Made by a program: the position numbers and the translations under genes. A stretch of DNA of 64,000 bases. Source: Podarcis cretensis. Lineage: Eukaryota. The DNA lies in the NCBI GenBank assembly GCA_951804945.1, contig OX638162.1, forward strand, positions 30,070,001 to 30,134,000. The letters are read 5' to 3'. The notes beneath the pieces were generated by a model. It was not told the DNA's origin. It ran no database searches and was given only the letters and a program-made list of their open reading frames with translations. Shown here piece after piece: positions 4,650 through 64,000 of this stretch (its first letter is position 1; each line of letters starts with the position of its first letter).

Positions 4650-5850
4650 AGACATCTAAGCAACAACGCGGGGAACGACGGGGGCTGGGCAAGCAGGCCA
4701 GAAGAAAGCATGTGCGGGGGGGGGGCAGCCCATCCCCTCGGGCAGTGCTTCTTTCCAATCCATCGAGGGCATCTCCGGCAGCGTTCAAGAGCTCTTGGAG
4801 AACATCCCCCCTCCCGCACCGCTTCTGGAAGCATCGGTGTCTGAGAAGGCGGGGGCTGGTCCCGGAGGAGGCGTGCTCCCAAGGGGTCCGGCAGGCCGGA
4901 GGCCGCCAAGCTGACTCCCTGCGCCCCCCACCCCCACCCCACGCGGCACTTGGAGCAGGCGGGCGCCAGCTGCAAAATTTGCCGCAGTGTGCGCGCCTCG
5001 CGTGCGCGCTCAAGAGCCTCCGCCACCGCGTCCCCCCTCCCCGGCAAAGGCGAAAGGGGGCGCTGGCCGGACCCTTTCCCGGAGGCCTTGGTGAGCAGGC
5101 TAGCCAACCAGCCTGCGAGCTGCCCCCTCCGGAGCAAAAGTACCAGCGCCTCCGCCTTCCAGTCCCAGGAGGGCTAGCTGGCCCATCTGCCCAAGACCAG
5201 TCCCCCGCCCCCCCGGGCAGGGATACCCCTCGGGGCACGTCCCCGCGGGGGGAAGCAATGAAGCCGGGGTGGGGGGGGAGCGGGCAGCAGCTGCGGACGA
5301 GGATGCTGCTGCGCCCCCTCCCTCCTCTCCTCCCTCCGCTCCCTTCCGGAGGTCGGGCATGCGGGGTGCAGCCCCCCTTCCGTCCCCCGACGGGCCTCCT
5401 CTCGGCCCGTGCGATGCGCGGAGGGCTCTGGCCACCCTCGTCCTCCCAGGATCCCACCCCTCTGACCGGCCGCGGCCGGTCCCATCCCCGCTCCCCCCAC
5501 CCCATGCACGTACCCGGTGAGGTGGCGACGCGTCCCTCCGCCCTCGGCTGCCCTCCACGACGATGCCGGATGGGCCTGGGCTGCGCCAGGCAGCTGCTGT
5601 CAGTGCAAAGCGGCGGCGGCGGCGGCGAAGTGGGGGGGGGGAGGAGGAGGGGGCGGAGCTGCTCCCCCCCCCGCTCCGGCAGCCTTAACCCCTCGTGAGC
5701 CGCGGCAAGGCCCAAGGCCTCCGAAATGCCCAAGCGCACGACTGAGCAGGAAAGGGGCAAGAGAGGGCTGGAAGTGGGGGGCGTTGCACGGCTCTTCCCC
5801 AGGACGGGAGCTCGCTCAGGTTGTGGATGCAAAAGGAGCCACTCCACTTC
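4650..5850. promoter_or_regulatory. Intragenic CpG island in MAP1A intron 2; probable alternative promoter
   Basis: Dense CpG and GC boxes; minus-strand donor CGG|GTACGT at 5514/5513. Confidence 0.7.
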
Positions 5851-20049: not shown

Positions 20050-20490
20050 CCCCACATGAAAGACACTGCTACTGTTAGGCAGATGTGTAGTTAGTGACTC
20101 AACAACTTTGTATAAAAGACTTGGACACAAAAAGTAGAGAAAATGTTCATCAAATCAGTAGATAACACCAAACCAACAAAATTCAAGGTGAGTCTAGCAT
20201 GATGAAGAACTGGACCAAAGTAACAAATTTAATTTCAACACAGATAAAGGCAACATTATGCATTTAGGTAGGAAAATCAAGACACACAAGTGCAGGATGG
20301 AAAGCGCCTGGCTTGACAGTAGAGCCAGGTTTCTTAGCACACCATGAGCTAAAAATGAGCCAGCAATGTGATGCCGCTACTAAAAAGGCTAATACAATTC
20401 TAGGCTACAACGGAAACATAGTGTCTGGATCACGAGAAGCTATGGGACCGCTAAATTCTGCTTTGGTCAGTCCTGTACTACTGTGCACTG
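20050..20490 (+). mobile_element. CR1 LINE relic
   Basis: LKMSQQCDAATKKANTILG...SALVSP motif. Confidence 0.8.
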
Positions 20491-20589
20491 CAGCAGTTTA
20501 AGAAGAAAGGACTAATAGACGAAAACGATGACAGTTCCCGGGCTCTCCCATAGATGACAGAGCAAATTTGTCTTCAGTTACTCCCGAAC

Positions 20590-21860
20590 CGGCAAGATCA
20601 AAATAGCAAGAAGACTGACCGCCAGGTGGATCTTCCAGGGAGCGGCGCCTCGGGGGCTCCTGCCCAGGCGACAGCGGACAAGGAGAAGGGTCCGGCCAGA
20701 AGAAGCCGCCCCGCTCTGGGCAGGTCCAGCGGCGGCGGCTGGGCCTGGCGACCCGCTTATCCTTCCTCCTCTTGGCGGCCAGAGTCCCGCCCCCTCCCCG
20801 CCACGGACTCTCCAGGGATGGGGACGCCGCCGCTCTTGGGAATTCCGGTCCAGGGAGCGCCGCGCCAGGGCCAGATCCAGCCGGTCCCGCGCCCCTCAGG
20901 TGCTCCCAACTGCGGCGACACGGCAGGCCCTCTCCAGGGTGCTGAACGCGGAGGCGGCGGCGGCTTCCGGCAGGCCTCCCCATCTCCCTCCCTCCCTCCC
21001 TCCGCCCGTCCTTACCGCGCTCGAGGCTCCGGCGCAGCGTTTCCCGCTCTTGCTCGGTGCCGACCTCGCCGATCACGGCAAGCACCGCGTGGCCCCGCCG
21101 CTGCCTCCCCCGCCTGCCGCTGCCGGGCGCCGCCGGCGTCTCCATGGTGACAGGCCCGGCCGCCGGCGTCCCCATAGCAACTGGTTCCCAACTCCGCAGA
21201 TGCCGCAGCAGCCTCCTGCGCGCGCCTCTTAAGGGGAGAGCCGGCCGCGCGCGGATTGGCTCCTCAGAACGCACGTGCCCCACGAGGCGCTGGGGCGGGG
21301 ATTCCCGTGGCCCCGCCCCCGAGGGCGTCCCCGCCCACCTACCTAGGCGTGCTTAGAATAAGCAGGGCGTGGGGCGGAGTCACAGAAGGGGCGGGGCTCT
21401 TTCCCCTCCCCGCGTCGAACGGGCTGGGAGGGGCGGGGCGGAATTGCATCTTCCTTCTCCTCTCCTGGAGAGATATACACGCTTCTTCCAGGACCCGAGG
21501 CGATCCCAGCCGCTGTCTTGCAGCCCAACAGGCGCTTATCTCTGTTAGCGGAGCCCCCTCCCCTACGCGCCAGGGTTTGATCCAGCTTTTGCTCCTGCTG
21601 CTGGGTTCCGGTGATGTACCCCCAGCCGGCACCGAGGAATGAGGGCGACCCTTCCCTCTTTTCATCGGGTGGGGCAAAGGAGAGCGAACCCCTTTGCCTG
21701 CCGCGAGAAGGCGATCCCTCCCCGCCGGCCAGAGGTCTGCCCCCCCCCCCAGTCAGGCCAGCGGCCTCCAAACGAGCGGAGGTGGGGAAGCTGCCTTGGC
21801 CCCCAGCTGCAGCGCCTGTCTACAATGCAGAGTGAGGGGCGGCAACCCGCGGGGCCCCTG
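20590..21860. promoter_or_regulatory. MAP1A CpG-island promoter
   Basis: X-boxes at 21138-21151 and 21168-21181, CCAAT(-) at 21255-21259, E-box CACGTG at 21272-21277, several GC boxes. Confidence 0.85.
21016..21175 (-). CDS. MAP1A: MAP1A coding exon 1 (long N-terminal isoform)
   Basis: Reads MGTPAAGPVTMETPAAPG...HAVLAVIGEVGTEQERETLRRSLERG, resembling the MAP1A/MAP1B N-terminus (HSLLIVIGDIGTE...LEQG). Ends at a phase-1 G|GTAAG donor. Lies in a CpG island, divergent from TP53BP1 as in mammals. Second in-frame ATG at 21145. Confidence 0.88.
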
Positions 21861-22631
21861 CAATGCTGGTGACCCTATAGCCCTCTTCCCTCAGAAGGGC
21901 AGCCCTGCCAGCCAGTTCCCCGACCTTCCTCTTTTACCTCCACGCTGGCAGCTGGTGTCCATCCCCAAGGGGCTGCAGGTTCTTGGCAGGGCAGAAGGTG
22001 GTGCTGAGCACTGAGGGCTTCTTAGCTTAGAAAGAAGAAAGGCAGCAGAGAAGTGACAGATAATTATACATGGTGTGGAGAAAGGGGACAGCTGCCCTTT
22101 GCCTTCTTTCAAAATATTAGATCCTAGGGACATACAGTGAAGCTGAGCATTGGAAGATTAAGGTCAGACAAAAGGAAGAATTTTTCACATGGCACGTAGT
22201 TAAATGATGGAATTCACTTCCACAACAATAATTTAATTTAAAAAATATTATTTATATGCCACCCATCTGACTGGGTTGCCCCAGCCACTCTGGGCAGTTT
22301 CTAGAAAATTATAAAACCACAGTAAAACATCGCACACTATAGGTGTGGCGATGGACCAGAACTCAGATGCCTTTGAAAGGGAATAAGAAAATAAGAAAAT
22401 ATGGAAGACAATCACCTTGTGTTTTGCCTGTTGTCGGACACTCCTTGGGGCACCTGATGGGCCACTGTGGGAAATCAGATGCTGGACCAAACGAGACCTC
22501 AACAGGGCACTTCCTAGCTCTTTTTCTTCAAAGAACCTGAAGTGGGCTGCTAATTTAAGCAGGGAAACAGCACTGAGGGGAAAGCTTTTAATTCTCTCCC
22601 CCTGCCCTTTCCTCAATTGTAAGAATATTCC

Positions 22632-25889: not shown

Positions 25890-27060
25890 CACGTGACCCT
25901 CGCTTTGGGGAGCTTGTGCACTGCTGCCTCCTGGCGTGCGCTGCTGGCGACCGGGCCTTCCGAGCCAGCTTGGACTCCCATCAGCGCCACCACCCGCGAC
26001 CACAGACCATTCTCTTGCTTATTTATATTCAGGCCTGGCATTGGAAGCGGGGAGGTGGAGCTTTCCGCGAGCCCCGCCCCCTCTCTGGCCTTGGCCGGGG
26101 CATGTGGCGCCGCGTTGTCACGGCAACCCCCGCGCAGCGCGGAACGCGTGGGGGCGGGGCCTGCAGCGTGGCCGGCCGGAGCCGCCGCGCGAACGCCCGA
26201 GGGGGCGGGGCAAGGCGTTCTTCCCGCGCGTGCGCTCGCTCCCCGACTTTTTTTTTTTGCCTGTGCGCGCGCTCTCGCTCGTCTCTGTGTCTGTTGGGGG
26301 AGGATTCGCAGCTCACGCGACCCCCCGTCCTCCCCTCCGAGAGGCCTCCTTCTCCGCCTGGCGCAGGATGGACCCCGCGGGGAGCCCGCTGGACTTGGGC
26401 TTCTGCCCGTCGGCGCCCTGCCTGCTGGTGGAGGACTCGCAGCCGGAGCCGGACTCCGCCCAGGACGACGGCGAGGAGCCGCAGGCCCTGCCCGGCCTGA
26501 AGAGGAGGTGGCGGGGGCCAGGGGCGGACGACGAGACGGATGGGCCGCGGGTCGTTCCGGGAGCGAAGGCGGCAGGAGGAGGCCCGGAGGAGCAGCAGGA
26601 GGAGGCCCGGGGCGCTGAGGGGGCTGAGCGGGGTCCCGCAGGGGGCTCTGGGCCCGCTCGCTTGCCGCCTTCGCTGCCGGCCTCCGACTCGCCCCGCGCC
26701 CTCCTCAGCCAGGTCTTGGAGCAGCTGCCGCCGCCGCTCGCCAGGAACACCAGGTGGGCACCGCCATTCCTTCTCCGCGGGCGGGCTTTCGGCCTGCTTG
26801 ACCCCTCTGAGACGTTGCTTGTCTCCCTTGCAGGGCGGCGGACGACCCCTGCGGCGGCGGCGGCGCTGCTGCTGCACCGGGCTCGCTCTGCGCGGAAGGT
26901 AAGTGGCCTCCTCCGCCTGCTGCTGCTGGGGACGGCCCTTGGGGGCTGCCCCTTCGCCATTGCTGAGAATCCAGCCCCGTGGTTGGGGGGGGGGGGGCTG
27001 CACAGGCCGTCGTCTGTTCTCGCTGGAGGCTGTCCTTGAACGGTGGCGGGGGGATCGGAG
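25890..27060. promoter_or_regulatory. TP53BP1 CpG island/promoter
   Basis: X-box GTTGTCACGGCAAC at 26114-26127, E2F-like ttcccgcg at 26221-26228, GC boxes; overlaps the first coding exons. Confidence 0.85.
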
Positions 27061-30000
27061 TCCCCTCCTGACTGTTCTGCAGCCCTCTTGGGTTCACAAG
27101 TAACCTTGGCGGGGTGGGAGAGGGAGGGGTTGTTTGCCGGGCCCATTTCCTCCCTTTGGATGCTGGAGCCCTTCCACATGTGCTGAGGAAGTTCTTATCT
27201 TCTGATGCTAGAATCAGGCATGTCGCAGCTGGGCTTCGGTGTTTTGGAGCTCTCCCAGAGCCAGAACCTTGAAGGAGACTCCACAGCTAGTGCGGTTAGT
27301 GATAAGGAGCAGCTGCAACCCAAAGTGGCCTTGGAAGAAGAGGAGCAGGAGGAGGATTCCAAAGGCGGTAGGTGAAGTGGGGGCGGCCTCCTGAGTCTTT
27401 AGCTGAGCAGCCCTTTCCTCTGGGATAGGAAAACTTCAACTCTTCTGTTAAACTACTCACACTGCCTCAAAAGGACTTCGGGCCCAAACTGAACCTTCTT
27501 TCTTTTAAACCATCCTTACTTGTTCATTCATTCGTTTGAAGAACATTTTACCCAGTTTACAATGTAGATGGCCAAAGCTTCCAGAATGGCTTACAAAGTA
27601 AGCGGTCCCTTTCCTTGGGCATACAGTCTAAAAGACATGCATTGGGCAGTGGGGTGAGTGGGGGAAAGCAAGCTCAGGCACCAGGTTTTAAACGTATTAT
27701 TCTTACAACAAGCTGGGATAGAGACAGGCCAGTTACTTCCCCTTCCCGCTTTTCTGCAGCTGGATGGATTGGCTGCCTCTGGGTGGCAGATGGGAGCCTT
27801 ACAGTTCTTTTCTCCTAGTACTTATCAATAAACTGAGTCTCTGGAGTAACAGTACTTTTGTATACAGTATCCCTGCAAGGCACTTGAGGGACTGTAGCTG
27901 CCAGTGGTAGAGCATGTAGTTTGCAAGCAGAAACAAGGGAGCTTGACTGAGCTTGAGCCCTGGGAAGCTGCTCTCAGAATAGACTATCCCAGACTAGGGG
28001 GGGCAAATAATCTGATCACATATCAGGCAGCTTCTTATATTCCAAAATCTTTTGAAGATAGTAATGCTGCTTGGATTGTGGTTGGATGTGATGTTATAAG
28101 TATCTTTTGGGTTGGCACTCACTGCTGTCCTGTTGTCTTCTCCATTGGAGATTGTCTTCTAAACTAACATTGAGTTGTATCCATTGTTAGTACTACTCTG
28201 AATAGACCCATTGAAATTAGTAGACATGAGTGATCTAGGTTCATTAATTTAAGTTAGGTGCAATCTTAGCAGTGTACATAATAAAATTACCAATAAAATA
28301 CATATAAAACTAGCAAAAAAACCAAAGCCCATAATAGATAATAGGTCATACAGGGAATCCAAGCAGATTTTGACTTAGCACCTAGATCAAAATCAGATTT
28401 AGTAATTCTCTGGAAAAGCCCTTAGAATGCAACATAGTGCAGTTGTGCTCTGGTATTTCAAGTGAAGCACTAATTCCTGATGCCTTTTCTGCTCTGCATG
28501 CAGATCCAGATGAAGTGACAAAGTCTGGGAGTGACTCTCCTGATAGGTAAATATCTCATACTTGTTGGCTAACTTGTTGCATGGTTGAACTTTCAGGAAA
28601 GGGGGCATGGAGAGCTTGCCCTCTCTGTAGGGGGTGCAGTTTCTTTGCCCATTAAACCAGCTGTGAAGCACATGTGGTTCCATGAAGTCCTTGCTGTCAC
28701 ACATGTGCCAAACATTCCTGCTGCTGGTAGGAGAGAAGCTGCTACTACTTTTCTGCCTTGTTCTTTGTGAAGGAAAGATATTTTCATTCCTGTTAGTTGG
28801 GATTCGGCTAAAAGTATTGGAGGAGCCTTGCTGTTGCCTCCTGGCCAAGAAGGAAAGAAAGAAGGGACAGACCTTCCCATTGGGATTTTGCAGGAGGGGG
28901 TTGCACCAAGGTGCTGCTGGCACTCTTATTAAACCTCATTTGAATGAGAAAAAAGTTCCCTGACTGTTTTCTTTTTTGCATTACCTAAAGAAATGGTGGA
29001 GTAGCTTATAGCCATTCCCACTGGTATTTTTCAGGCCCAGCAGCAAAGTTCTGTTTGCACCTTTGGCAAAACTCAGCACAAAAGCAAACATTCCTCCACT
29101 CCCCAAGTTCTGTGCATGCTTTGTGTCCTGTTTTTAATCCCCAGGGAAGCTATCAGCTTATTTGTGTGGCATTCTTTCAGCTTGTTGTATTGTTTTTCTC
29201 AAGATGTAGTCCACCCTGGGGCCTTACAGTGAAGAGCAGGCAACAAATATAAACAATGATACCCTGGGGAATATTGATTACACTTATGTTCCCAGCAGCA
29301 CCCCAAAAATTCTGCAGTTCCATAAAGAACCTGCAAGGAGTCCAACTTCTGCCTGCCATCCACTTGACAGAAGGCCACAAGGGACGGATCCCTCTGGGTG
29401 GCATACACAGGATGCTGATGTCTTATCCACTCAGGAGGACATGTTTGGCCAGAGCAGCAAAACAGGTGAAAACAGACTGCATGCCTGTGCCGTGGCCCCT
29501 GCGACCCATGAGGGGGAAGCAGGTGCAGTTTGCTGAAGCTCTGCCTATCCTGATAGTAAAGGAAGGTTTCCTACTTGGTTACTATATAGATAGTGCTACA
29601 TAGGTTCATGGGACCACATAGACAGATTAGTGTATGTCTCCTATGCACGGCACACAGTTGCTGTGGGAGGAATGGTAGGCAATTGCTTTGTGGATGATTG
29701 GAATTCCAGTGGCACTGATAAAGTTGCCTTTTCAACGGATGTGTTTCTCTGTCACCCTTTGCTGTTGCTGCATTTTGAAAATGCCTCAGTGTTTTGAATT
29801 CTTCAAATTTTGCCTCTTTTGTTTGTGCAGATGGCTTTGAATATGTAGTGGCACAGATAACCAATGCTGAACAAGTTGTACAGGGTTGTCAGATTCTAGC
29901 ATGGGCTGCTCAAAATGTAGCTCATCAGTTGCATTGCTGACTTGCGTGCAGCACCCTGAGAGTTCTAGTTTTCAGGCAAATATGCAAAATCATTCTTTGG

Positions 30001-42000: not shown

Positions 42001-45000
42001 GGGGGAACAATGCGGCAAATCATGTTGGGTTGCCTTGTGAGCAGCTTTATCTGGGCTTTGCTGTTTACCTTGAAATGCGAGGGATAAATTCTTTGTGCCC
42101 ACAGTTCTGTGCCATGACCCTGGGAGCATGTGTGGGGCCTCCAGGGCATTGTGGCTGGCAGGCAGGCTGGCTGTGCAGAGGTTAACGCTGCCTTTGGTTT
42201 CCCTAGCCCTAGGAAGGGGGGCAGCCAGCCTCAGTCTCCAGTCCAGCCTGACCATGCAGCAGTTACTGGGGTGTGTGAGGAGGAAGCGCAAGGCATGATC
42301 AACCAGAGGAGTGGCAGAGCCCCTCCAACTCCTCGCAGACGAGGGCGAAGGGGCCGCCTCACATCGCGATCGGCCGGAGCCAGGTAGCGTGGTGAAGGTC
42401 AGCTGATGCTGATGAGGGAGGTGACCCTGGTGGGGTGGAGTAGCAAGAGCTAAAGGCCCTTGCAGCTTCTCCAGCTGTTTCTCTCCCTGGATCTGCAGGG
42501 CCAGCTTGCCAGCTGTGGAGGATCTGTCAACCACAGCCTTGCCAGAAGAGGACTGCCACACGCATCGCCCTTTGAAGGGGCAGGACCGCAGCATCTCCCC
42601 TGAAATCCCCTTGCAAGAGCGTCTGGGGGTTTCTACCAGCACAGAGCTTTCCTCTGCCGCCGCCACCTCTTCTGCGGACAGCTTTGTGGGCCTCCGGGTG
42701 GTGGCAAAGTGGTCCTCGAATGGCTACTTCTACTCTGGGACTATCACACAGGATGTAGGGGGTGTCAAATATAAGCTGCGCTTTGACGATGGCTATGAAT
42801 GTGATGTTCCAGGCAAAGACATCTTGCTGTGCGACCCTCTCCCCCTGGAAACAGAGGTGACGGCCCTTTCGGAGGACGAATACTTCAGCGCAGGTAACTC
42901 GTCTGGCTGGCAAGGGACCTGCAGTGTTTGGGGTGGGCGGTAGGGGGGAGTTGGGTCCCAGGCTGTGAGCTGCCCTTATGATGCCTTCTGCCTTGGCTGC
43001 AGGGGTAGTGAAGGGGCACCGGAAGGAGGCTGGGGAGCTGTTCTATTGCATTGAGAAGGAGGGCCAGCGGAAGTGGTACCGGCGGAGAGCAGTCATCTTG
43101 TCTTTAGAGCAAGGGAATCGGCTCCGAGAGCAATTTGGGTTGGGCCCCTACGAACCCGTCATGCCCCTGACAAAGGCGGCTGACATCAGCCTTGGTAAGC
43201 AGCCTGTAGGCAACTGCCCTGTGGGTCTGGCCAAGAGAAATGGGAACACCTAGGAACCTCTTGAGGGCTGGAGCTGCAGGATGCTGGCCTTGGGTAAACT
43301 CTTCAGTTTTAAGAGGCGCAAGTGACTTCCTTCTGCTACCCTGCAGAAAACATGCAGAGGGGCCTTGGTGCTGCTGCGTGTTGAGGTGGGAGCTAACAAC
43401 ATTTTCCTTGTGGGGCTAGATAACCTGGTGGAAGGAAAGCGGAAAAGGCGCAACCTTGGCTCCCCCAGCACCTCCAACAACACAACACCCACCCGCAAGG
43501 GCCCTGAGAGCCCCCAGACCCCGCACAGGCTGTCTAGCAAGAGGAAGCTAGTTGCCTCAGAAGAGGAGAGATCCCCTGCCAAACGAGGGCGGCGGGCAAC
43601 CCCTACAAAGCCAGGTCAGACTGTTTTATGTCTCCTTGTATTGCATCTCTTCTCCCTGGACCAGATTTTCCCTTCTTGGTCTTCTCCAGCCTTTCCTCCC
43701 AAACCAGAGGAGCTGGAGCTGAGCTCTTGCACCTGGAGGATCAAGGCTCCCCTCCCTCTCCATGACAGAAATTCTAAGTTGAGGCTGCTGACCTGCTGTC
43801 AGGAGGCAGCCACAGGACTTTGATTTTCCTCCCTCCCTCCACAGGGGCTGCCTGTTCCAGGGAAGCAGTGAGCCCATCTGTCAGTGGAGGGGACTTGGGA
43901 GATATCCCGGCACCAGATGACCGATGGGGGCCTATGCCCCACAACAAGACTCTCTTTCTGGGCTATGCCTTTCTCCTCACAATGGCAGACCCCACAGATA
44001 AACTCTCCAGTTGCCAGGAGCCTGCAGTGAGCAGCGAAGAGGAAGGTGAGTGCTCCATTGCTCCAGGGAGGCTGTTGGGGGCAAGGGTGGCCCTCGTTGA
44101 CTGAATCTGGTTAAGCCATTGCTCATTTAGGGTGGTGACAGAGAAGTGGGTGACAGAGAAGGCAGAACTAGTAAGGGACCAAAGGGGGCCCACCTAGTTC
44201 AGCATCTTGTTCACATGGGGGCCAAAGGAAGGCAGCTTGGCCAAGGATCCCTGGTAGGGATTCTGCTAGCTCTGGTTTCTGTCCTCTTTGCAGGATAGTG
44301 GTGTGCCTACAAGGGCTAAGGAAGTGGCAAGTTGTGGGGCTGCAAAAACTTGAAGTCAGCAAGCCAGTATCTTACTGCACTTTCCAAAGTTAGTTTATTG
44401 AGGGGATAGTTTAACCTGGGACTTGGTAAGACTGGCTGTATCCTTGCACCTTGCCAGCAGTGTGCAAGCACATCACAGGAGGGCTGTTGGGCAACATGAC
44501 AGTGTGAAATCCCTTGAAGGCTACTTGGGGAGCCGTGCCAGGTGGCAGTCATGCCTTCTGCTATTCCAGGTCCTAGAAGCCCCAAAGATAAGGAATTTCC
44601 AATTGTGGGGCAGAACATGTTTGCCATCTTGTGGCCCTTTAAGAGAAATCAGTGATTTGGGAATGAGCTGCAGATCTCTCCTACAACTTTCATGCTCCTT
44701 ACAGCTACCATTTGGGGCTCGCTTTAGGGCTCAAAAAATAATTTCACTAACTTAACAGTCAATTTCTGAACATGGCTCCAAGTGTTGGTGCTTACCTTTT
44801 AAAACCCTTTGCAGCAAGGGGCTTGGATTTTTGAAGGACCACCACCTTCTGAACGAACCAGCCCAGGTACTGAGGTCATCACTGAAGGCTCTTCTCTGGG
44901 TTCCGCCTCCTTCTCTTAATTGCATGTGTGCTGTCCTGAAGGTTTTCTTGGCAATAGCACACCCCTTTGGGTCACTTTCCTCACCTGTTACTACTATCTC

Positions 45001-47031
45001 TTATGTCATCTTGGCACTAGGTGAAGACCTTTCTGCGTTTCTCTAGGCATCTCTAAATGTCTAAATAATCTGTGCTGCACACACGTTCTTGTCAATTGTA
45101 TTATTTTCTGTTGAGTATAAAAGCAGTTCTTAGAGCACATTACTGAACAGTGGAGAATAATTTTTAAAGTGAATAGCTGTTCCTAGTTATGTTTTGTCTC
45201 TGAACTGAATTTCAATGCAGTTGTTTTAATGTTCTTTATTTAACAAAATTCATAGTTTACAAAGAAAAATCAAAATACTAACTTAAAAATTGACAGAAGC
45301 GAGCATTTAAAAGAAGTCAACATGCAGCTTTTAAAATAGAAATAAAAATTGAGATTTTGATTGTGTGGAAATGTTTCACAGTTCTCCTGCAAGGGAAGAG
45401 GTGTAGTGCTCTATTTATGCTAAAGAATTAACTCCGCTAACTTCATCCTGTTTTCTAGACTTCTTGGAGGTAACACCTTACAACAAACACTACATTGGAC
45501 TGCAGCTGCAAGCTGGAGGTGGTTTCATCCTGGAGGACTTCAATGAAAGCCAGGTCAGGAGCCAGAGCTGGGGATACATGAAGTAGCATCACCTAGGTTG
45601 GCAGTGGAGATTTATTTAGAGAGGGTGTTGGTGCTTTGCTGCTGTTTTCCTTTTAATGATGAAATGGATGCTTTTCTGGGTGTGGTCCAAGGGAGGCAGG
45701 TGCGTGACGGGTGGCAGCTTCACCTGCACACAGGTTGTCAAATGGGAATTGCCAATTGTTCTCCTTTCAAGACCTGGGATGAGAAAAGGAGGTGCCTGGC
45801 CATGATGCCTCTTGGAATGGGACAGATCTTGATAGGAGCTGCTTGAAATAGAGGCAGAGAGAGCCTCTTTTCCTTCCATTGGCACATTTCTAAATTCTCT
45901 ACTTCTGCCAGTACTCAGCCTTCCATTTTGCAGTTAGCCTGGCTGGCTAGTTGGTGTCAAATAAGCATTTGACCACACCCGGTGTTTTATACTGAACCTG
46001 CAGCCTCTTCCAGGGCTTTGTGTTTGTATGGAAGCCCAGGTCTCAGCCTCCACTTCCTTTGTCCAGTGCAGTGCAGCCTACAAGTGCTTCCTGATAGCAG
46101 ACAGACACTGCCGCAACCGGATTTACTTTCTGTGCCTTGCCCGAGGAATCCCCTGTGTGTCTCACGTCTGGGTCCATGACAGTTGTCATGCCAACCAGCT
46201 GCAGAACTACCGGAATTATTTGTTGCCAGCTGGTTATAGCCTGCAGGAGCAGAGGTTGCTGGACTGGTAAGTCCGTGAATGTTGGAGGGACCATGAGCAG
46301 CTTACCCACTTGGTGCAGGTGGAACAGGGTGGCATGCCCAGTTTCTTTGCAGTGGAGCTGCCTCTAACTTTTGCTTCTTTCTAGGCACTCCCGTGAGAAC
46401 CCTTTCAGTAAGCTGAAGGTGCTTCTGGTGTCCAGTGAGCAGCAGGACTTCCTGGAGCTCTGGTCTGAGATTCTTATGATGGGGGGCGCTGCTTCTGTTA
46501 AGCTGCAGGAATCTGCCTCATGGAGCAAAGGTACAAGCCCTGGAAGGCAGCCAGCTGGTTTCTGTGGCGGGTAGATTGGCAAGAGGCTCTCCGTTGCCCA
46601 CTGAGACATACCAATCCCCCTGTGCAGAAAAGAGGCCTGCTTTAACTTATCGATTCCTGAGGGTTGCTGAGAAGTTGGATGAGGCAGGGCAAGAATTGAA
46701 TGGCTGCTTCTCCCTTCACCCCTTTCCTTGTGTGGAGCTGCCATCCATCCTTTTCCAAAGGCAGCAAGATCAAGTACCTGGTGCTGTGAACAAGCAGGAG
46801 GAAAGGTTTGACCACACAGGGCAATTCTTGTTTTCTGTTTCCACAGATGTGAGTCTGGCTGTGTTTGATGTCGTGGTGACTGATGCTTCGTGCCCAACAG
46901 CTTTCTTGAAATGTGCTGAAGCGCTACAGCTGCCAGTGGTGACCCAAGAGTGGGTGATCCAGTGCCTCATTGCGGGGAAGAAAGTTGGATTCAAACACCC
47001 AAAGTATCAGCTTGATTCTGTCCCCAGTTGA
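26368..47031 (+). CDS. TP53BP1: TP53-binding protein 1 (53BP1), 25 coding exons, ~1844 aa
   Basis: Phase-consistent exons: 26368-26753, 26834-26898, 27212-27367, 28504-28546, 29299(or 29296)-29465, 30405-30510, 31178-31269, 31545-31702, 32093-33248, 34350-34469, 35307-35531, 35845-35896, 36384-36479 (GC donor), 37946-38435, 39459-39611, 41417-41700, 42207-42383, 42499-42893, 43003-43194, 43420-43614, 43845-44045, 45459-45553, 46067-46266, 46385-46530, 46847-47031. Motifs: [28 protein letters not shown]8 site SAATQT, oligomerisation domain ([15 protein letters not shown]), GAR, tandem Tudor ([16 protein letters not shown]), UDR ([20 protein letters not shown]), NLS, tandem BRCT. Structure of the first exon is least certain. 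Confidence 0.96.
34825..34890 (-). mobile_element. tRNA-derived SINE head; similar fragments at ~3260-3420, ~27885-27930, ~30570-30760, ~54600-54780
   Basis: Reverse strand shows A-box agtggcagagc and B-box ggttcaatccc. Confidence 0.6.
36567..37171 (-). mobile_element. Solo LTR (605 bp) in the TP53BP1 GC-AG intron
   Basis: TGTGGGA(A)TGT...ACATCCCACA terminal inverted repeats with TG...CA ends; 5-bp TSD CCCAG (36562-36566, 37172-37176); TATA-like and polyA-like signals on the minus strand. Confidence 0.85.
38768..38861. mobile_element. Tc1/mariner (Tigger-like) MITE
   Basis: 12-bp TIR cagtcaaacctc / gaggtttggctg (1 mismatch), flanked by TA on both sides. Confidence 0.8.
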
Positions 47032-47141
47032 ACCTTTTTGCTTTGTGGAGGCTGTCATTGTCACCAAGGTTTTAAATGTCTGTGTCACTTGAACTGTGCA
47101 TGAAGTGCTGTATATAGTTTTAACTTCTGGACTTTTATGAT

Positions 47142-47147
47142 AATAAA
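47142..47147 (+). terminator. TP53BP1 polyadenylation signal
   Basis: AATAAA 110 nt after the stop codon, followed by a T/GT-rich tract. Confidence 0.7.
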
Positions 47148-47697
47148 CGTCAATTTTCTTGTTGCAGTACCTAGGATTTCTCCTCTTACCAACTCTAAAG
47201 TGGCCCAGCATGATTGCTTGCAGCTGCCAGTGGAGGGAAGAAGCGAAAGTTGCTCATTTAATAAGCTGACATCAATTGCTGTAGATGGCCTGTCCTTTTT
47301 ATCCCTTGGTCCAAGAACTGGGTCTCATTCAAGGGTTCCCCAGAGTTCCTTACTCAGTTATACCAGCCTACACTCTGTGTAGATGCAGACTAGGATATGC
47401 CAACAAACGTGGAGGTGTTTACACATTGTTGGTGTAGGACAGCTCATGAGTGGGAGGGGCAATCTCCTTGTGGAGACTCCTGCCCCTCAGATAAGAAAAA
47501 TATATATACACAGTGGATTGGGCACTAGCTAGAGTTCTTCCATGGTATGCTTTTGCTGCTGAACTTGGAAGAGTAGAAAGAAATGTGTGGGCTGGAGAGA
47601 AAAAGCAAAAATAAAACTGATGGCAGAAGAAAATGAAACAAATAGGGGTGGAGGAGGGCAGGTTACCTGAAAGGCACCAGCAGTCTTGCACCACCTG

Positions 47698-47703
47698 TTT
47701 ATT
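47698..47703 (-). terminator. TUBGCP4 polyadenylation signal (probable)
   Basis: First minus-strand AATAAA I noticed after the proposed stop (~590 nt downstream); T-rich sequence follows. Confidence 0.55.
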
Positions 47704-48291
47704 CTCCTCCTCTCCCTCACCGTGTGTGTGAGGAAAAGAAGCTGCACCAAACCCCACACACAAAAAAGTAGAAGGAACACTTTCATTGGCAGACTCAGCC
47801 CAGAATGGAAATATTCAGTATCTTCTCCCTGCTTCCGTATTTAGAGACACGAAATTGCATTTTCAAAAAAGCAACTTTCCTGCAGTTAATCACACTTTCC
47901 CATTAAGAGCAGGTCAACGCTCACCCTGATTTGCACAATGTGGCTCCTGGATGATGAGGGCAATGAGAGAACCTCCTTTGCTCGCAGCCTTACTTGCAGT
48001 GCTAGCAGTAGAAAGAGCCAAATTCGCTGACAAGTGACAGCAGCATTTGAAAACAATTCAAAGTCAATGCTAAGCAGCACTTTCACTTCCGGAAAAACAT
48101 GCAGCATAAGGAGAGCAACAGTAGAGACACATATAATGAAGCACACACTGACCGAGTCCTTTCTGAGTGCCAGGATAAGGTCCTAATATCTCTCAGCACC
48201 TTCCCCTCCAGAAGTCAGAACATGTATCCTGACCAGAGCAGGTTTGCTTCCCAGAAAAGGTGGCAACGGCCTTCATTGTGAGACTGGTGGT

Positions 48292-51200
48292 CTATTCTAA
48301 TCCCACACTGTAGAGAAAGAAGGGGCAGTTAATTAGAGGAAGGGCTGTGTGGCTGCAGCAGGGAGAAGGGTTGTGTAAATTGGGCACAGTAGCCAAAACT
48401 GCATGATGTTAGAGATGCACACACAACCAATTTCATATTATTTACAGACCACAGTGTGCAAAGTTTGAATTGCATTTTTTAACATTGCACACAGCTGGTT
48501 ATAAATACATTTATATCCCACCTTCTAGGTCCCAAAACAGAAACAGCGGAAAGTCTAGATTATGCCTAATCATCACATCCCTCTCACCAGCAGCTCTCAA
48601 ATAGGCTTAAGACCTTGTGTGTTTCTGGTTAGTAACAGGCCTGTGTAATTAAAGATTCCCAGTCCTTGGGAAACCTTAAGCCCTAGAAGGCAAGGAAACC
48701 CAGGCTAAGGATGGCTGTAGAAGAGTCCACATTCAGGCAGAGCCCCCCACCTCCCACCACCAGCAGGAATATAACTAAAGGGGCTTGTGTGGTTTCCTGG
48801 CACTTGCCAAGGCCTACCTGCCCAAGGTGCCTCCAGCCTGGGTATAGTATTTGTTGTAGTCAAGACGTAACAGCAACTGAGCCAAGTCTGAATTGATCTG
48901 GTGATTGTGAACACTGGAGAGGATCTTGAAAAGGAGTGAAGACTGACAGCTGAAGCCCTGCAAAGGTAAACGGCACCCATGAGCCATAAATTGAGGGCTC
49001 TGCCTTAGCAGAAAGGGCTGAACAGAGATGACTAGAAGGCCACTCGAACCCATATGGGGAGGAAGCATCCCAGGCAGCTGCCCCACCTCATCGCTCACCC
49101 TTTGGGAACTGCTGTCCTGGAGGAGGAAAGGCCCCAGCTGTTGCTGCCAGTATGCCACAAGGGCCTGACCAAGGCTGTTTCTGATGAGCTTCATGGAAGA
49201 GCAATGGCCAGACGTCTTGTGTTCCTACCCCCACCCCATGCTGAATTCATCAGAGAGCTGCCTGCTCTGAGTTTCCAACATGCTTCCACAGGAGAGATGC
49301 CCCCAAAGCTTTGGGCGATGTTTTTCAGGTAGAAAAGTGCAAGGCGCACCTTGGCCAGGATGCTCAACTGGGCCGTCCCCCGCTCATCCAGTGGTCCCCG
49401 GTTCTGGCTGACAAGTGAGCAGAAGCTATGGCATAGATCCAGTATTTCATTCAGACAGTGGAAAGCCTGCAAAACCAAAGAGCAGAAAGGAGATGGAGGG
49501 CCTCACCAGAGCAGAAGCTTCTCGTCTTGCCCTTCCGCAGGCTGAGATAATGACAGGATTCAGCAGGATTATTGGACTGGTTTACTCAAACTATTTCACT
49601 TCTTTCTTAGTAGAGCAATTCTTAAGGTCTAATGGAGCTGAGGCAAACAAACAAAACAAAAATCTTCATACACTGCACAGCAGCTACCAAAGCCCGAAAT
49701 TTCTGTTCAAGCATCATAAGCTGCTCTAAACATGAGTTTCCAAGACCAATGAACATACTTTGATAGGCTTCTCCAGATTGCCAAATGCTACCAAGTCACC
49801 AGGAAGACACTCCCCCCCAAAAACACATGATGAAGGCAAACTGACACAGTTGCAGTTCATTTATTTTCTATCCTGCTTTTCTGTACAGACCTGTACCTCA
49901 CTATTCACTTTAGCAGGTAAGGGCTTTGGTTGTGCTCATGGCCAAGCAACACAGCCATGTTCACAAGGGTCTGGGTTTTGCTTTAGTTCCTTCTTGCCGT
50001 GTTTGCATTGAAGTGAGCTAGGAGTGCTGTACTGGATGGGCATTTGGACTGTTCGAACAGGACCAATTCTTCTCCTGGGGACACAAGGCAAACAAACTAT
50101 GGGGATCACTCACTGGTTTCAGCAGAATGAAGGACTGTGCTAGGAGATTGCTCAAGAAGTGATCATGTGCCAGTCGAATGCTCTCAAAGTCACGGGTGGA
50201 GTTGATCTGCTGCAGAAGTTGGGAGAACTGAGACTCCAGAACATCCACCTGAGGATACGGAAAAGTGAGGGAGAAGATACTGCCTGCTGTTTCCAGTCAT
50301 TACTAGCCACCAATTTTTGGTGGGAAATTTAGGGTATCGCTGGGAGAACTGGCTGGTGTATATCGCCTGGAGGAGTAGCACCGAAGCCTCAGAGTTAGCC
50401 CCTGAGACCTGTGTTGCTGCTCACCTGCAGGTAGTACTGCAGATTGTCTACAAGGAATGTCATGTGATGGCGCAGTTGCCACTTGATGGCATCTGTCCTG
50501 TTGGATTCCAAGCGCTTGCACCACATCTGTAGAGCCCAGCAGTGCTGCAGTTCAGCCTGGACTCGACGCACACTTAGCAGGTACTTGAAGACCACATTGT
50601 ACCTGCAAGCCAAGAGGAAGGCAAGCAAAAGATAGCTGGGTCAGACCAGGCCAGCATCTCCTCCTCCCACCCAGGAAATGTGTGCTCTGCTACAATCAAC
50701 CTTTGACACCAAAATGCCACAGAATCCACCTGGAAACAGAAACAGGGATAAAGCGGCCCTCACTTTTCCAGGACGGCAGGAGTAAAGAGGATATGCAGGG
50801 GCCACTGCACTCTGTAGGAGAGCCCCAGAGCAGCCCAGCCTGATGCGGGGGATTCATGGGGAGACAGTTCCCGAGAAGGCGTATCTCGAGCTTGAGCGGC
50901 ATCTGAAAAGGAAGCCAGGAGGCAGGTGGGCAACAATATGGCTGCAATCCTTGCTGGACCCCACCCTCCTTCCCTGCCACCCTCCTCCTCATTTTATCAA
51001 TGGGCAGCCAATGCAGATGAGAGACTTGCTCCAGGCCACCCAGGGGGTTAATGAGACTGGCCTTGGCTTTGAACTCCCAGCTTCCCAGACCTAGGGCTGC
51101 CATTCTGCCTCTATGGAACCAAATTGGCTTTGTGGCTCTGTGCTTGCAGTTGTGGTGGGGCCTAAACCTGCCCTGCTCAGGGCTGCTTGGCTCCCTGGCA

Positions 51201-61524: not shown

Positions 61525-62014
61525 CAGCGCTTTTTTTCTGGGGAGATGCATACCCCTAAACATTTTGTGAATCTAAGTTTGGCCTCATTGAGGGGCAGTA
61601 TTTCAATATGAGTAGGAAAATGAGAGTACCCCTAAAAAAAACAAAAACAAAAAAACAATTTATTTAAGGTAGATAAGGACAAGATGAAATTATACAATAT
61701 AAATAGATAGTATTGTGAGTACTTATCTACTTTTAAAAATTTTCACTTATGATCTTTTTCTCTTACTTCTTTATTCTTTCTTTGTTCTTTTTTTCTGATA
61801 TCTTTCATTTCACTGCTTTATTGTGAATAGCATTTTATAGAGGTATAAATAACTGTAAATATGAAAAGAGACAAAATATTCTCTATTTTTTTTCCCCTTG
61901 GTTAGATGTATTTTCTTTTGTTGTGAATATGTATGTTTTCTAATTTGTACTTAATAAAAATATATTTTAAAAAAGAGAGTACCCCTAAACATTTTTTAAA
62001 GAAAAAAAGCACTG
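61525..62014. mobile_element. hAT-type MITE containing a nested retroposed insert (61637-61974)
   Basis: cagcgct...agcactg termini with perfect 8-bp TSD ttgctacc. Inner insert flanked by 15-bp TSD gagagtacccctaaa, with AATAAA (61953) and an A-rich tail. Confidence 0.85.
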
Positions 62015-62067
62015 TTGCTACCTAATAAAAAAAAATCTGAATTTTTCTTATGGTTTCCAGTTGGCGG

Positions 62068-62415
62068 CAGGGTTGCCAACTTGAATAAAATATGGGAGGG
62101 CAGGCAAGCCCCGCCCCGCATAATCGATCACATGACAGGGTGCAGGCACACAATTTGAATGGCAATAACCATAGCTGTCAACCTTCCCTTTTTTTTTTGC
62201 GGGAAATTCCCTTATTCCAGCGCTGTTTCCCGCTGCTATCCCGGATTGTTAGATATCCCGCAGGCTGTCCCCGGGACAGGTGAGGCTGCTGATCGCTTAT
62301 TTTTGAGGCTACTGATCCCTTATTTTCAAATCTGAAAGTTGACAGCTATGGGGGGGGCTGGATCCCTCAAATATTTTATTGGGGGCAGCGAAGACTCCTC
62401 GGCATGACTCCTATG
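62068..62415. mobile_element. Composite hAT-like relics; inner element 62170-62350
   Basis: Perfect 13-bp TIR catagctgtcaac / gttgacagctatg inside a sequence starting cagggttgccaac; no TSD seen. Confidence 0.6.
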
Positions 62416-62569
62416 AGGGGAGGGGGAAAATTCCAGCAAACCGAAATACGGCCTTGTTTCTTCGTGGGCTCGCCAAAATCTGCCATCATTAAAGAAAACG
62501 AACTTTCCCTGCCCTACTTCTATCAATGTGCCCCGTTGTGAGTTTGATTCCTCCCGCTTTGAGGTGCCA

Positions 62570-64000
62570 TCCTCACCCCCGAGCATGCGCAGAATGTCTC
62601 CTCTTTCCTCAGGGAACAAGCAACCGATTTGCTGCCAAGCAGGGCTGAAGCCCTCCAATGCCTCTCATGCCCGCATAGTATAACTAGATCGCCCTGAAGC
62701 TGCCTTTATATCGGTGGGGCTCCCTCCTTCCCGAGGAAGCAGAGGCAGTTGGCTCCGTGGTGGCGTCCGCCTGTTTCCTGCAGATCCTTCGCGGTTGCAC
62801 TGGGCGAGGAGTTAGCAATGCAGAGTTGCAAACTGCAACGGGGCAGAACACCACCCCCGCTTCCCAAATGGGTCCCTTTGCCCCAGTGTCCTGTTTCCAA
62901 CCGCAGCTAGCCCGGAGCCGCAACAACGGGGTATCTTGCCTCTGGACATGGAGGTTCTCCGCGGAGGCGCGCGTCTTCAGGAAAGGGGCCGTGCATCGCC
63001 TCCCCGGCTCTTCTCCGGTGGGAGCCCTTTCCCCGCTGCGGCGCTCCCCGGAGAGGCTCCAGCCTCCAGCCGCCGCTTCTTCCAGCGAGTGCCCACTGGG
63101 CGGGGCGACCTGGCGGAGGCTCCTGCCAAGCTGGTTGGGCTGGGAGGTGCAGCCGGAGACACACCCCGCTAGGCTGGCCCGACAGCGCCGCCGCGCCAGG
63201 AAGGAGAACGGGCGGCCGCTCCCTACCGCCTTCCCCTCCGCCTCCACCTCCTCGCCGCCGCCCAACGGACGGAGCGGACACTCCCCTCCCGCGTTCCGAG
63301 CAGCCGCCGCAGCCTGAGAAACAGCAGCAGCCTTCTCGTCCTGGCCGGACGACCGACGGGCTCCGACTAGACGGAACCGCCGCTGCTCCCTCTGCCTTGG
63401 CTCGTCCTCATGGCCACCCCGGAGGAGATCGACGGGGCGGGCGTGGCCCGGCCCCACTACGGCTGTGAGTCTCGGGCCGAGGGAGGGAAGGGCGCGTTGC
63501 TTGCGGCTTGAGAGATGCCTCGGGCCGTCGGTTTGGTGCCAGCGTCTCCTCCGCCGCCGCCGGGGCCGCTTTGTTGGAGCTGGCGCCCAGGCACAGCCCT
63601 TACCGGGCCCGGAGGAATCGTTCCGGCTGGCGGGGAAGGAGGACGCTGGCTCGCTTGGCCCGGGACTGTGGGTTTATTTGGCCGAGCAGGAAGCTGTGAA
63701 AGTCTTGGCGCCCCCTGCCTCCCCATCGCCCCCTCAACATGGCTGGTGGGCGGGCGGGAAGCAGCGCTCCCCGGATTGATCGTGTGAACGGCCTGCCTCG
63801 CCGAGCGGCGCGCGTTTCTCTCGGGCTCGTTTGCACGCGCTGTCGCTTTTCGCAGGGTCACGGGCCGGGTCCCCTGTTGGGCATCTTTGAGCGAAGCAGC
63901 CGCTTTCTCTCGCGCTCTTTCTTTTCCCGGGAGGGCCGGGGGGGGGGAGAGAGGAAGAGGAGGAGGCCCGATTTTAGGGGCCGTGGGGCGGGGTAAGGAC
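62570..64000. promoter_or_regulatory. IQGAP1 CpG island/promoter
   Basis: Dense CpG around exon 1; NRF1-like gcatgcgca at ~62583. Confidence 0.85.
63410..63464 (+). CDS. IQGAP1: IQGAP1 coding exon 1 (gene continues beyond the window)
   Basis: ATG at 63410 gives MATPEEIDGAGVARPHYG(S), matching the IQGAP1 N-terminus (human MSAADEVDGLGVARPHYGS, recalled). 55 coding nt, then a T|GTGAGT donor; within a CpG island. Confidence 0.9.

What the first reader, a model, noticed from the sequence alone, without database searches (positions are those of the whole stretch)
46112..46123. 53BP1 BRCT1 phosphate-binding motif appears lost: RTRK -> RNRI
Seen: codons CGC AAC CGG ATT give [11 protein letters not shown] in an otherwise near-invariant exon. 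Known (numbering recalled): human has R1811-T1812-R1813-K1814, the R-T-x-K motif of phosphopeptide-binding tandem BRCTs (BRCA1 R1699/T1700/K1702), and K1814M is the standard mutant that abolishes gamma-H2AX/phosphopeptide binding. The p53-contacting residues in the same exon (V1829, D1833, N1842-Y1846, R1858, D1861 equivalents) are all intact. Inference: a natural separation-of-function 53BP1 that keeps p53 binding but not phospho-reading, possibly altering gamma-H2AX or USP28 signalling.
Basis: partly seen in the sequence, partly recalled or inferred. Interest (0 to 1): 0.78.

Follow-up and report, generated by a model that had tools for sequence, protein, structure and literature searches.

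The report
Lizard 53BP1 lacks phosphate-binding lysine
Wall lizards and their close relatives carry a DNA-damage protein, 53BP1, in which the lysine that grips phosphate has been naturally replaced, the kind of change laboratories make to switch that grip off in the human protein.

Summary
Window 46112-46123 (+) reads CGC AAC CGG ATT (RNRI), inside the TP53BP1 BRCT1 exon 46067-46266. Solved human 53BP1 structures have RTRK at that place.

It is not an assembly error. Contigs of two other samples agree. NCBI/UniRef models of Podarcis muralis, P. raffonei and P. lilfordi also read RNRI.

It is not private to one species. Lacerta agilis and Zootoca vivipara have RNRM, which is the laboratory K1814M change as wild type. 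The worm lizard Rhineura has RTRL. Tuatara, geckos, skinks, iguanians, Varanus, most snakes, most birds and marsupials keep RTRK.

A tree built without the motif columns joins Lacertidae and Rhineura (95/87). It needs two Lys losses among 38 taxa; the second is Candoia. The domain otherwise evolves slowly in lacertids.

T1737, K1773 and R1811 are kept, as are the p53-contact residues.

Most likely the canonical phospho-ligand grip (gamma-H2AX, PI(3)P) is lost or much weakened, while p53 and USP28 binding persist. This is inferred from human mutants and is untested in lizards.

Similar natural losses occur in tinamous, gobies, a knifefish and cyclostomes. The finding is therefore one case of a recurrent pattern and is of moderate interest.

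The parts
46112..46123 (+). Four codons CGC AAC CGG ATT = R-N-R-I, at the place of human R1811-T1812-R1813-K1814 (T1812N, K1814I).
   Evidence: Contigs of X1 and X3 are unchanged here.
46067..46266 (+). TP53BP1 exon coding the second half of BRCT1 (human 1796-1862, with the final Trp codon split over the splice site). It holds the pocket motif and the p53-contact residues.
   Evidence: One search gives a 67-residue ungapped alignment to 1gzh_B/1kzy_C/5ecg_C. The splice joints 45549>46063 (cut +4) and 46265>46384 (cut +1), GT..AG, come from X15 contigs. Pfam BRCT_2 matches weakly, E 0.0027, below its cut-off.
43845..44045 (+). Exon coding the start of BRCT1. It holds the kept phosphate ligands T1737 and M1738. 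The 5' end is approximate.
   Evidence: One search aligns it to 5ecg_C 4-40. The 3' joint is 44043>45457 (cut +2). The 5' end was placed by eye against the P. muralis model.
45459..45553 (+). Exon holding the kept second phosphate-contact lysine, K1773.
   Evidence: One search aligns it to 1gzh_B 43-72. It is 30 of 30 identical to P. muralis.
46385..46530 (+). Exon coding the start of BRCT2. It holds the Tyr142-pocket residues: N1883 is Asp here and L1887 is kept.
   Evidence: One search aligns it to 1gzh_B 141-185. Pfam BRCT_3 matches at E 8e-8.
46847..47031 (+). Last coding exon (rest of BRCT2), ending in the stop codon.
   Evidence: Pfam BRCT_3 matches at E 1e-19. The ORF ends at 47031. The joint is 46528>46845 (cut +2).
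42686..43172 (+). Two exons of the 53BP1 tandem Tudor domain, which identify the gene. Bounds are those of the stretches searched, with an intron between them.
   Evidence: Pfam 53-BP1_Tudor matches at E 7e-40 and 2e-25.

Best explanation
The window carries the 3' end of the TP53BP1 orthologue of a Podarcis wall lizard.

In the lineage leading to Lacertidae, and probably already in the common ancestor of Lacertidae and amphisbaenians, the alpha-2 lysine of the BRCT1 phosphate pocket (human K1814) was replaced by an uncharged hydrophobic residue. It is Ile in Podarcis, Met in Lacerta and Zootoca, and Leu in Rhineura. Lacertids also changed T1812 to Asn.

In the human protein K1814 makes a charged contact with the phosphate of H2AX pSer139. 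K1814E or K1814M abolish that binding, and binding of PI(3)P as well. So the lizard tandem BRCT most likely no longer reads these phospho-ligands, or reads them far more weakly.

The rest of the domain stays under purifying selection. This includes R1811 (needed for USP28 binding) and the p53-contact surface.

What is shown: the substitution, its taxonomic spread, and the conservation of the other residues. What is inferred: the loss of binding and the retention of p53/USP28 binding.
For: Sequence and alignment to solved human structures.

Not an error: contigs of X1 and X3 and three independent Podarcis assemblies.

Spread:
- Among the 120 proteins listed, one search counts RTRK 106, RNRI 3, RTQK 3, RTRT 2, QTRK 2, RNRM 1, CNRK 1, RTRL 1 and RTRQ 1.
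- Tuatara, platypus, amphibians, lungfish and coelacanth have RTRK.
- In 113 distinct C-terminal tails, the position is K in 104 of 107 rows that are neither lacertid nor Rhineura.

Tree: built without the four motif columns, it gives Lacertidae 100/100 and Lacertidae+Rhineura 95/87, with a minimum of 2 Lys/non-Lys changes in 38 taxa.

Purifying selection: lacertid tip branches are 0.004-0.03 and the stem is 0.10, no longer than in other families.

Function of the residue:
- PMC4688034 (passages): the phosphate is bound by T1737, the M1738 backbone, K1773 and K1814. K1814E and R1811E abrogate gamma-H2AX peptide binding.
- PMC5065530 (passages): K1814M blocks gamma-H2AX binding, enhances p53 binding, leaves USP28 binding intact and rescues Nutlin-3 and IR phenotypes like wild type.
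- Preprint 10.64898/2026.04.18.710733 (passages): neither R1811A nor K1814M accumulates on PI(3)P vesicles.
Against: - No binding measurement exists for any lizard 53BP1.
- Three of the four phosphate contacts (T1737, M1738 backbone, K1773) and R1811 are kept in all 5 lacertids and in Rhineura. That could mean the pocket still does something.
- Lacertids gained an Arg at 1808, three residues before R1811. It might compensate.
- The lacertid stem also carries 8 other changes at otherwise conserved sites of the tail. Two of these are at sites invariant in 107 of 107 other rows. So the Lys is not the only unusual change.
- No DNA of relatives could be fetched, so there is no codon-level test.
- Teiids, gymnophthalmids and other amphisbaenians are unsampled, so a single origin with Rhineura is parsimony only.
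Confidence: 0.65

Rival explanations
1. The pocket is compensated. The lizard domain still binds gamma-H2AX or another phospho-ligand. It would use the kept T1737, K1773 and R1811, plus the lacertid-specific Arg at 1808 or another nearby basic side chain.
For: T1737, M1738, K1773 and R1811 are conserved in 5 of 5 lacertids and in Rhineura, whereas K1773 is Q or R in Anolis, Elgaria and phrynosomatids. Q1808R is lacertid-specific; the position is Q in 104 of 107 other rows.
Against: Single K1814E or K1814M changes abolish binding in the human domain even though K1773 and T1737 are present. Rhineura lacks the Arg at 1808 yet also lacks the Lys. I had no coordinates to check whether residue 1808 can reach the phosphate.
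Confidence: 0.18
2. The loss is a neutral consequence of weak constraint. Phospho-reading by the 53BP1 BRCT pair is only weakly selected in vertebrates, and the lacertid change is one of many drift events with no special biology.
For: The Lys or the Arg was lost independently in these lineages:
- Candoia: RTRQ
- two tinamous: RTRT
- Brachyhypopomus: RTRT
- Periophthalmus: CNRP
- Neogobius and Hemicordylus: CNRK
- Sapayoa and Dryobates: QTRK
- lampreys: RSRE/HSRE
- hagfish: HGRS

K1814M behaves like wild type for IR resistance and Nutlin-3 sensitivity in human cells.

This reading is compatible with the best explanation. It differs only on the cause of the change.
Against: The Lys is kept in 43 of 46 representatives at 55% identity or more, and in 83 of 102 more distant ones. 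So it is constrained in most lineages. Four of the 12 lacertid-specific changes at conserved sites fall within residues 1803-1814, which looks clustered, although that window was chosen after seeing the data.
Confidence: 0.45
3. The reading is an artefact: an assembly or sequencing error, a pseudogene or a paralogue.
For: One neighbouring codon of the window (46082) does differ from all four runs laid on it.
Against: - Contigs of two samples match the four codons.
- Three other Podarcis assemblies give RNRI, and two other genera give RNRM.
- The frame is open through all BRCT exons.
- Spliced contigs in a relative use this exon.
- Tudor exons lie upstream and a GCP-family gene lies downstream.
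- Lacertid branches are short.
Confidence: 0.01

Closest known systems
Human 53BP1 K1814M / K1814E engineered pocket mutants
   Same: The same residue of the same protein loses its positive charge. Lacerta agilis and Zootoca vivipara carry Met itself at this position. R1811 and the p53 surface are intact, as in the single mutant.
   Different: The lizard change is natural and fixed in a family. In lacertids it comes with T1812N, Q1808R and L1803F. Podarcis has Ile and Rhineura has Leu. Its biochemical effect has not been measured.
Other natural 53BP1 pocket variants found here
   Same: These are orthologues named TP53BP1 by their sources in which K1814 or R1811 is replaced while the rest of the exon stays alignable. 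They are Candoia aspera, the tinamous Nothoprocta and Eudromia, the knifefish Brachyhypopomus, the gobies Periophthalmus and Neogobius, lampreys, hagfish, Hemicordylus, Sapayoa and Dryobates.
   Different: The replacement residues differ (Q, T, P, E, S), and in some lineages it is the Arg that is lost. Most are single species or genera in my sample. The lacertid case spans three genera and has a likely shared origin with an amphisbaenian.
Pocket-lysine mutants of other tandem BRCT phospho-readers (BRCA1 K1702, MDC1 K1936, fission yeast Crb2 K619); residue numbers recalled, not from any call
   Same: They share the Ser/Thr ... Thr-x-Lys pocket architecture, and the Lys-to-Met change is the usual way to kill phosphopeptide binding. 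This is recalled knowledge.
   Different: They are different proteins, and they are engineered or disease variants, not fixed wild-type states.

Membership tests
TP53BP1 orthologue | 53BP1-type tandem Tudor domain upstream on the same strand | tested here: met
   Pfam 53-BP1_Tudor matches at E 7e-40 and 2e-25 for 42686-42901 and 42978-43172.
TP53BP1 orthologue | C-terminal tandem BRCT matching solved 53BP1 BRCT structures | tested here: met
   Four exons, searched one by one, hit only 53BP1 chains 1gzh_B, 1kzy_C and 5ecg_C at E below 0.001. Their E-values are 2e-38, 2e-15, 2e-10 and 7.5e-7. Pfam BRCT_3 scores above its cut-off for the last two exons.
TP53BP1 orthologue | Nearest full-length relatives are named TP53BP1 | tested here: met
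   Compared with the P. muralis TP53-binding protein 1 model, the window's exons are identical at 66 of 67, 30 of 30 and 50 of 53 residues.
TP53BP1 orthologue | Conserved neighbour gene (human TP53BP1 lies next to TUBGCP4; recalled) | tested here: inconclusive
   A GCP_C_terminal gene lies on the minus strand at 50021-50628. The human gene order is recalled and was not checked here.
Phosphopeptide-binding tandem BRCT (pSer pocket) | Ser/Thr at the end of beta-1 that binds the phosphate (T1737), and the next backbone NH (M1738) | tested here: met
   Both are kept. Their role is taken from PMC4688034.
Phosphopeptide-binding tandem BRCT (pSer pocket) | Lysine of the Thr-x-Lys motif at the start of alpha-2 (K1814) | tested here: not met
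   The window has Ile, coded by ATT at 46121-46123. Other lacertids have Met and Rhineura has Leu.
Phosphopeptide-binding tandem BRCT (pSer pocket) | Threonine of the Thr-x-Lys motif (T1812) | tested here: not met
   The window and 5 of 5 lacertids have Asn. Rhineura keeps Thr.
Phosphopeptide-binding tandem BRCT (pSer pocket) | Arg that reads the ligand's C-terminal carboxylate (R1811), and the second phosphate lysine of 53BP1 (K1773) | tested here: met
   Both are kept. Their roles are taken from PMC4688034.
Phosphopeptide-binding tandem BRCT (pSer pocket) | Measured binding of a phosphopeptide | not testable with these tools
   This needs recombinant protein and FP or ITC measurements.
   All are identical to human in the alignment and in 5 of 5 lacertids, except that Lacerta has Ile at 1829.

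The most novel reading that the evidence does not exclude
Lacertoid lizards are a long-standing natural knock-out of phospho-reading by the 53BP1 BRCT pair, perhaps older than 100 million years (date recalled, not computed).

The hydrophobic replacement (I/M/L), together with the clustered lacertid changes at 1803, 1808 and 1812, may not be drift. It could be a retuning of the pocket: towards stronger or constitutive p53 binding, since K1814M enhances the p53-53BP1 interaction in human cells, or towards a new ligand that is not phosphorylated.

If so, gamma-H2AX reading by 53BP1, conserved from yeast Crb2/Rad9 to mammals, would be shown dispensable in a whole vertebrate clade. These lizards would then be a ready-made system for separating the repair role of 53BP1 from its p53 role.
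Probability: 0.15. Interest if true: 0.7.

Novelty: new variant of a known kind. Interest (0 to 1): 0.5.

Why it matters
How much the gamma-H2AX contact of the 53BP1 BRCT pair matters is still argued. Pocket mutants lose ATM foci and slow heterochromatin repair (PMC4688034). Yet they behave like wild type for radiation survival and for the p53 response (PMC5065530).

Here a whole lizard family, and probably its worm-lizard sister group, has lived without the pocket lysine. It has kept the rest of the domain under tight constraint. This is nature's version of the separation-of-function mutant. It suggests that the p53/USP28 surface, and not the phosphate pocket, is what selection holds most firmly in these animals.

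Parallel losses occur in tinamous, gobies, a knifefish and cyclostomes, so the loss is recurrent. These species give ready material for testing what the pocket is for.

Tried and rejected
1. Exon-level search of the 5.8-billion protein set gave only 3 hits (quail, pangolin, one Logan ORF), all RTRK. It was too few for a comparison. I therefore used the representative search and then a full-length search with the Rhineura model that the tool returned.

The idea that the ancestor carried ATG (Met) stays open. Both AAG>ATG followed by ATT or CTG/TTG, and AAA>ATA followed by ATG, ATT or CTA/TTA, are equally short paths.

3. Reads of relatives at the site. X5 and X15 cover it, but the table leaves 116 differences unshown. 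I make no claim for them.

4. Ligand side (H2AX tail and MDC1 in lacertids). I had no query sequence from any tool, and I type nothing from memory, so this was not done. The search of earlier findings by words found nothing.

5. Structure prediction was not run. At 85% identity to solved structures the fold is not in doubt, and the tool returns no coordinates with which to test whether residue 1808 reaches the pocket.

6. Paper searches for earlier reports:
- '53BP1 BRCT lizard': 4 papers, none on this by title or abstract.
- '53BP1 squamat': 1 paper, on elephants.
- '53BP1 BRCT phospho-binding pocket evolution': 4 held, 3 listed, none on this by title or abstract.
- One search was badly formed (min_terms 2). 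It returned only lizard papers and says nothing.
I saw only listings for these papers. Subscription journals are not covered. Supplements were not opened.

7. I first took N1883D for a third pocket change. I rejected it as special, because Asp is common across geckos, skinks, Anolis and Elgaria.

8. The tree still held the motif columns. I repeated it without them, and I cite for the counts.

9. The window's exons were searched one by one. I never joined them into a spliced model. Full-length comparisons used only models that the tools returned.
Full report
WHAT IS AT THE SITE

Window 46112-46123 on the + strand reads CGC AAC CGG ATT. In the frame that starts at 46067 this gives R-N-R-I within a 67-residue stretch.

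A phmmer search of that stretch against all PDB chains finds only human 53BP1: 1gzh_B residues 73-139, 1kzy_C and 5ecg_C, at E about 2e-38. The alignment is ungapped with 57 of 67 identities, and human has R-T-R-K where the window has R-N-R-I.

I searched the neighbouring exons one by one. They hit the same three chains, and Pfam gives BRCT_3 for the last two. Upstream on the same strand are two exons of the 53-BP1_Tudor domain. Downstream on the other strand is a GCP_C_terminal gene. The gene is therefore TP53BP1. I never joined the window's exons into a spliced model.

NUMBERING

I took 1gzh_B index + 1723 as the human number. The alignments then put the expected letters at T1737, M1738, K1773, R1811, K1814, N1883 and L1887, and also at N1845 and D1861. 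The first seven are named in passages of PMC4688034 and the last two in passages of PMC5065530.

- Kept in the window: T1737, M1738, K1773, R1811, R1813 and L1887.
- Changed in the window: T1812N, K1814I and N1883D.

IS IT REAL?

One read-laying run on 44000-48000 was accepted. All four runs are kept as contigs.

- Run X1: one contig covers 44284-47423 with 9 differing letters. All 9 are listed and none is at the site.
- Run X3: one contig covers 44176-48000 with 19 differing letters. All 19 are listed and none is at the site.
- X1 and X3 are two samples of one study under one species label.
- X5 and X15 are other species labels. They cover the site, but 116 differences were not printed, so I say nothing about them.

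X15 holds spliced contigs with GT..AG joints. These fix the exons at 45459-45553, 46067-46266, 46385-46530 and 46847 onward, so the exon is used in transcripts of a relative.

Independent genome annotations also agree. The TP53BP1 models of Podarcis muralis, P. raffonei and P. lilfordi read RNRI. They match the window's exon at 66 of 67 residues. The single difference is Gln for the window's Lys at codon 46082, and all four runs also read C there instead of the window's A. The window therefore comes from a Podarcis lizard. An assembly error at the motif is excluded.

HOW FAR DOES IT REACH?

The representative search with the exon turned up a 1833-residue protein, 90% identical to the exon, with R-T-R-L. 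It is Rhineura floridana. Searching with its BRCT region gave 841 proteins, of which the best 120 were listed. The motif counts among those 120 are:

| Motif | Count |
|---|---|
| RTRK | 106 |
| RNRI | 3 |
| RTQK | 3 |
| RTRT | 2 |
| QTRK | 2 |
| RNRM | 1 |
| CNRK | 1 |
| RTRL | 1 |
| RTRQ | 1 |

With the cluster look-ups, the states at the Lys position in squamates are:

- Ile in three Podarcis species.
- Met in Lacerta agilis and Zootoca vivipara.
- Leu in Rhineura.
- Gln in the boa Candoia aspera.
- Lys in the other 27 squamates tabulated: geckos, skinks, Hemicordylus, Elgaria, Varanus, four iguanians and ten other snakes.

Outgroups with RTRK are tuatara, chicken, ratites, marsupials, platypus, four amphibians, lungfish and coelacanth.

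I built a maximum-likelihood tree of the last 290 residues with the four motif columns removed. It recovers Lacertidae (100/100) and Lacertidae plus Rhineura (95/87). It needs a minimum of two Lys/non-Lys changes among 38 taxa, and three Thr/Asn changes at 1812.

The simplest history is one loss of the lysine before lacertids and amphisbaenians split, followed by swaps among Ile, Met and Leu. Teiids and other amphisbaenians were not available, so this rests on parsimony alone.

IS THE DOMAIN DECAYING?

No. Lacertid tip branches are 0.004-0.03 changes per column and the family stem is 0.10. These are no longer than in other squamate families, and the root-to-tip path is among the shortest.

Against 107 other distinct tails, lacertids have 12 family-specific changes at sites that are at least 90% conserved. 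Four of them lie at 1803, 1808, 1812 and 1814 (L>F, Q>R, T>N, K>I/M). Two others hit sites invariant in all 107 rows.

The changes therefore look clustered near the pocket, but I chose that window after seeing the data. The lysine is also not the only unusual lacertid change.

WHAT IT MOST LIKELY DOES

From passages of PMC4688034:
- The phosphate of H2AX pSer139 is held by T1737, the M1738 backbone, K1773 and K1814.
- R1811 holds the terminal carboxylate.
- K1814E or R1811E abolish peptide binding.
- In cells these mutants fail to restore pATM foci.

From passages of PMC5065530:
- K1814M blocks gamma-H2AX binding.
- It enhances p53 binding and leaves USP28 binding intact; USP28 binding needs R1811.
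- It restores Nutlin-3 sensitivity and radiation resistance like wild type.

A 2026 preprint (passages) reports that the BRCT pair binds PI(3)P and that R1811A or K1814M lose it.

An uncharged Ile, Met or Leu cannot make the lysine's contact. The likeliest reading is therefore that lacertoid 53BP1 has lost or greatly weakened its canonical phospho-ligand binding, while keeping its p53 and USP28 surfaces. Lacerta and Zootoca carry the laboratory mutation itself as wild type.

The binding loss is an inference. The other three phosphate contacts and R1811 are retained, and lacertids have a new Arg at 1808. Both leave room for residual or compensated binding.

The papers I read do not support it. 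USP28 binding depends on R1811, which is kept, and not on K1814.

NOT UNIQUE

The same pocket has changed elsewhere.

| Lineage | Motif |
|---|---|
| Two tinamous | RTRT |
| Knifefish Brachyhypopomus | RTRT |
| Mudskipper Periophthalmus | CNRP |
| Goby Neogobius | CNRK |
| Cordylid Hemicordylus | CNRK |
| Sapayoa and Dryobates | QTRK |
| Lampreys | RSRE/HSRE |
| Hagfish | HGRS |

Even so, the lysine is kept in 43 of 46 representatives at 55% identity or more, and in 83 of 102 more distant ones. The pocket is constrained in most lineages but has been given up repeatedly.

KNOWN OR NEW?

My paper searches found no report of this (one search was badly formed and is uninformative). I saw listings only, and subscription journals and supplements were not covered.

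I file it as a new natural variant of a known protein and of a known loss-of-function state. Interest is moderate. It is a clean, old, family-wide natural version of a standard separation-of-function mutant. But the human mutant is mild in most assays, and parallel losses exist.

LIMITS

- The H2AX side was not checked.
- No structure was computed.
- Divergence dates are recalled, not computed.

Noticed in passing
window 46082: The window has A here (codon AAG, Lys; human position 1801). All four runs laid on it read C (Gln), and so do the three Podarcis protein models and human. It may be a private allele of the source animal, a species difference or a single-base assembly error.
   Followed up: partly
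It is Met in 5 of 5 lacertids and in Tiliqua, and Ala in Lerista. It is Thr in Rhineura, Phrynocephalus, three geckos, tuatara, birds, a marsupial and platypus. My pattern found no match in 11 of 29 proteins tried.
   Followed up: partly
window 50021-50628 (minus strand): Exons of a gamma-tubulin complex component lie tail to tail with TP53BP1 (Pfam GCP_C_terminal, E 1.5e-5 and 1.8e-10). I recall TUBGCP4 as the human neighbour.
   Followed up: partly
window 44134-44267 (intron): Summed contig depth jumps about tenfold here (715 against 69 in X1). Many short contigs end at 44176-44223 with unlike flanks in three runs. This looks like a fragment of an interspersed repeat.
   Followed up: no
window 46442-46445: Contigs of X15 leave out three letters here. 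The P. muralis model lacks one Gln of the S-S-E-Q-Q run just before residue 1883. This is a one-codon length difference among close relatives.
   Followed up: no
P0159 (Hemicordylus capensis), P0019 (Heteronotia binoei): Thr1812 to Asn arose independently in a cordylid, together with R1811C, and in a gecko, with the Lys kept. Gobies also show Asn at this position.
   Followed up: partly
window 4001-6000, 20001-22000, 26001-28000, 62001-64000: These 2-kb bins have G+C of 0.62-0.65 against about 0.45 elsewhere. I did not look at them.
   Followed up: no
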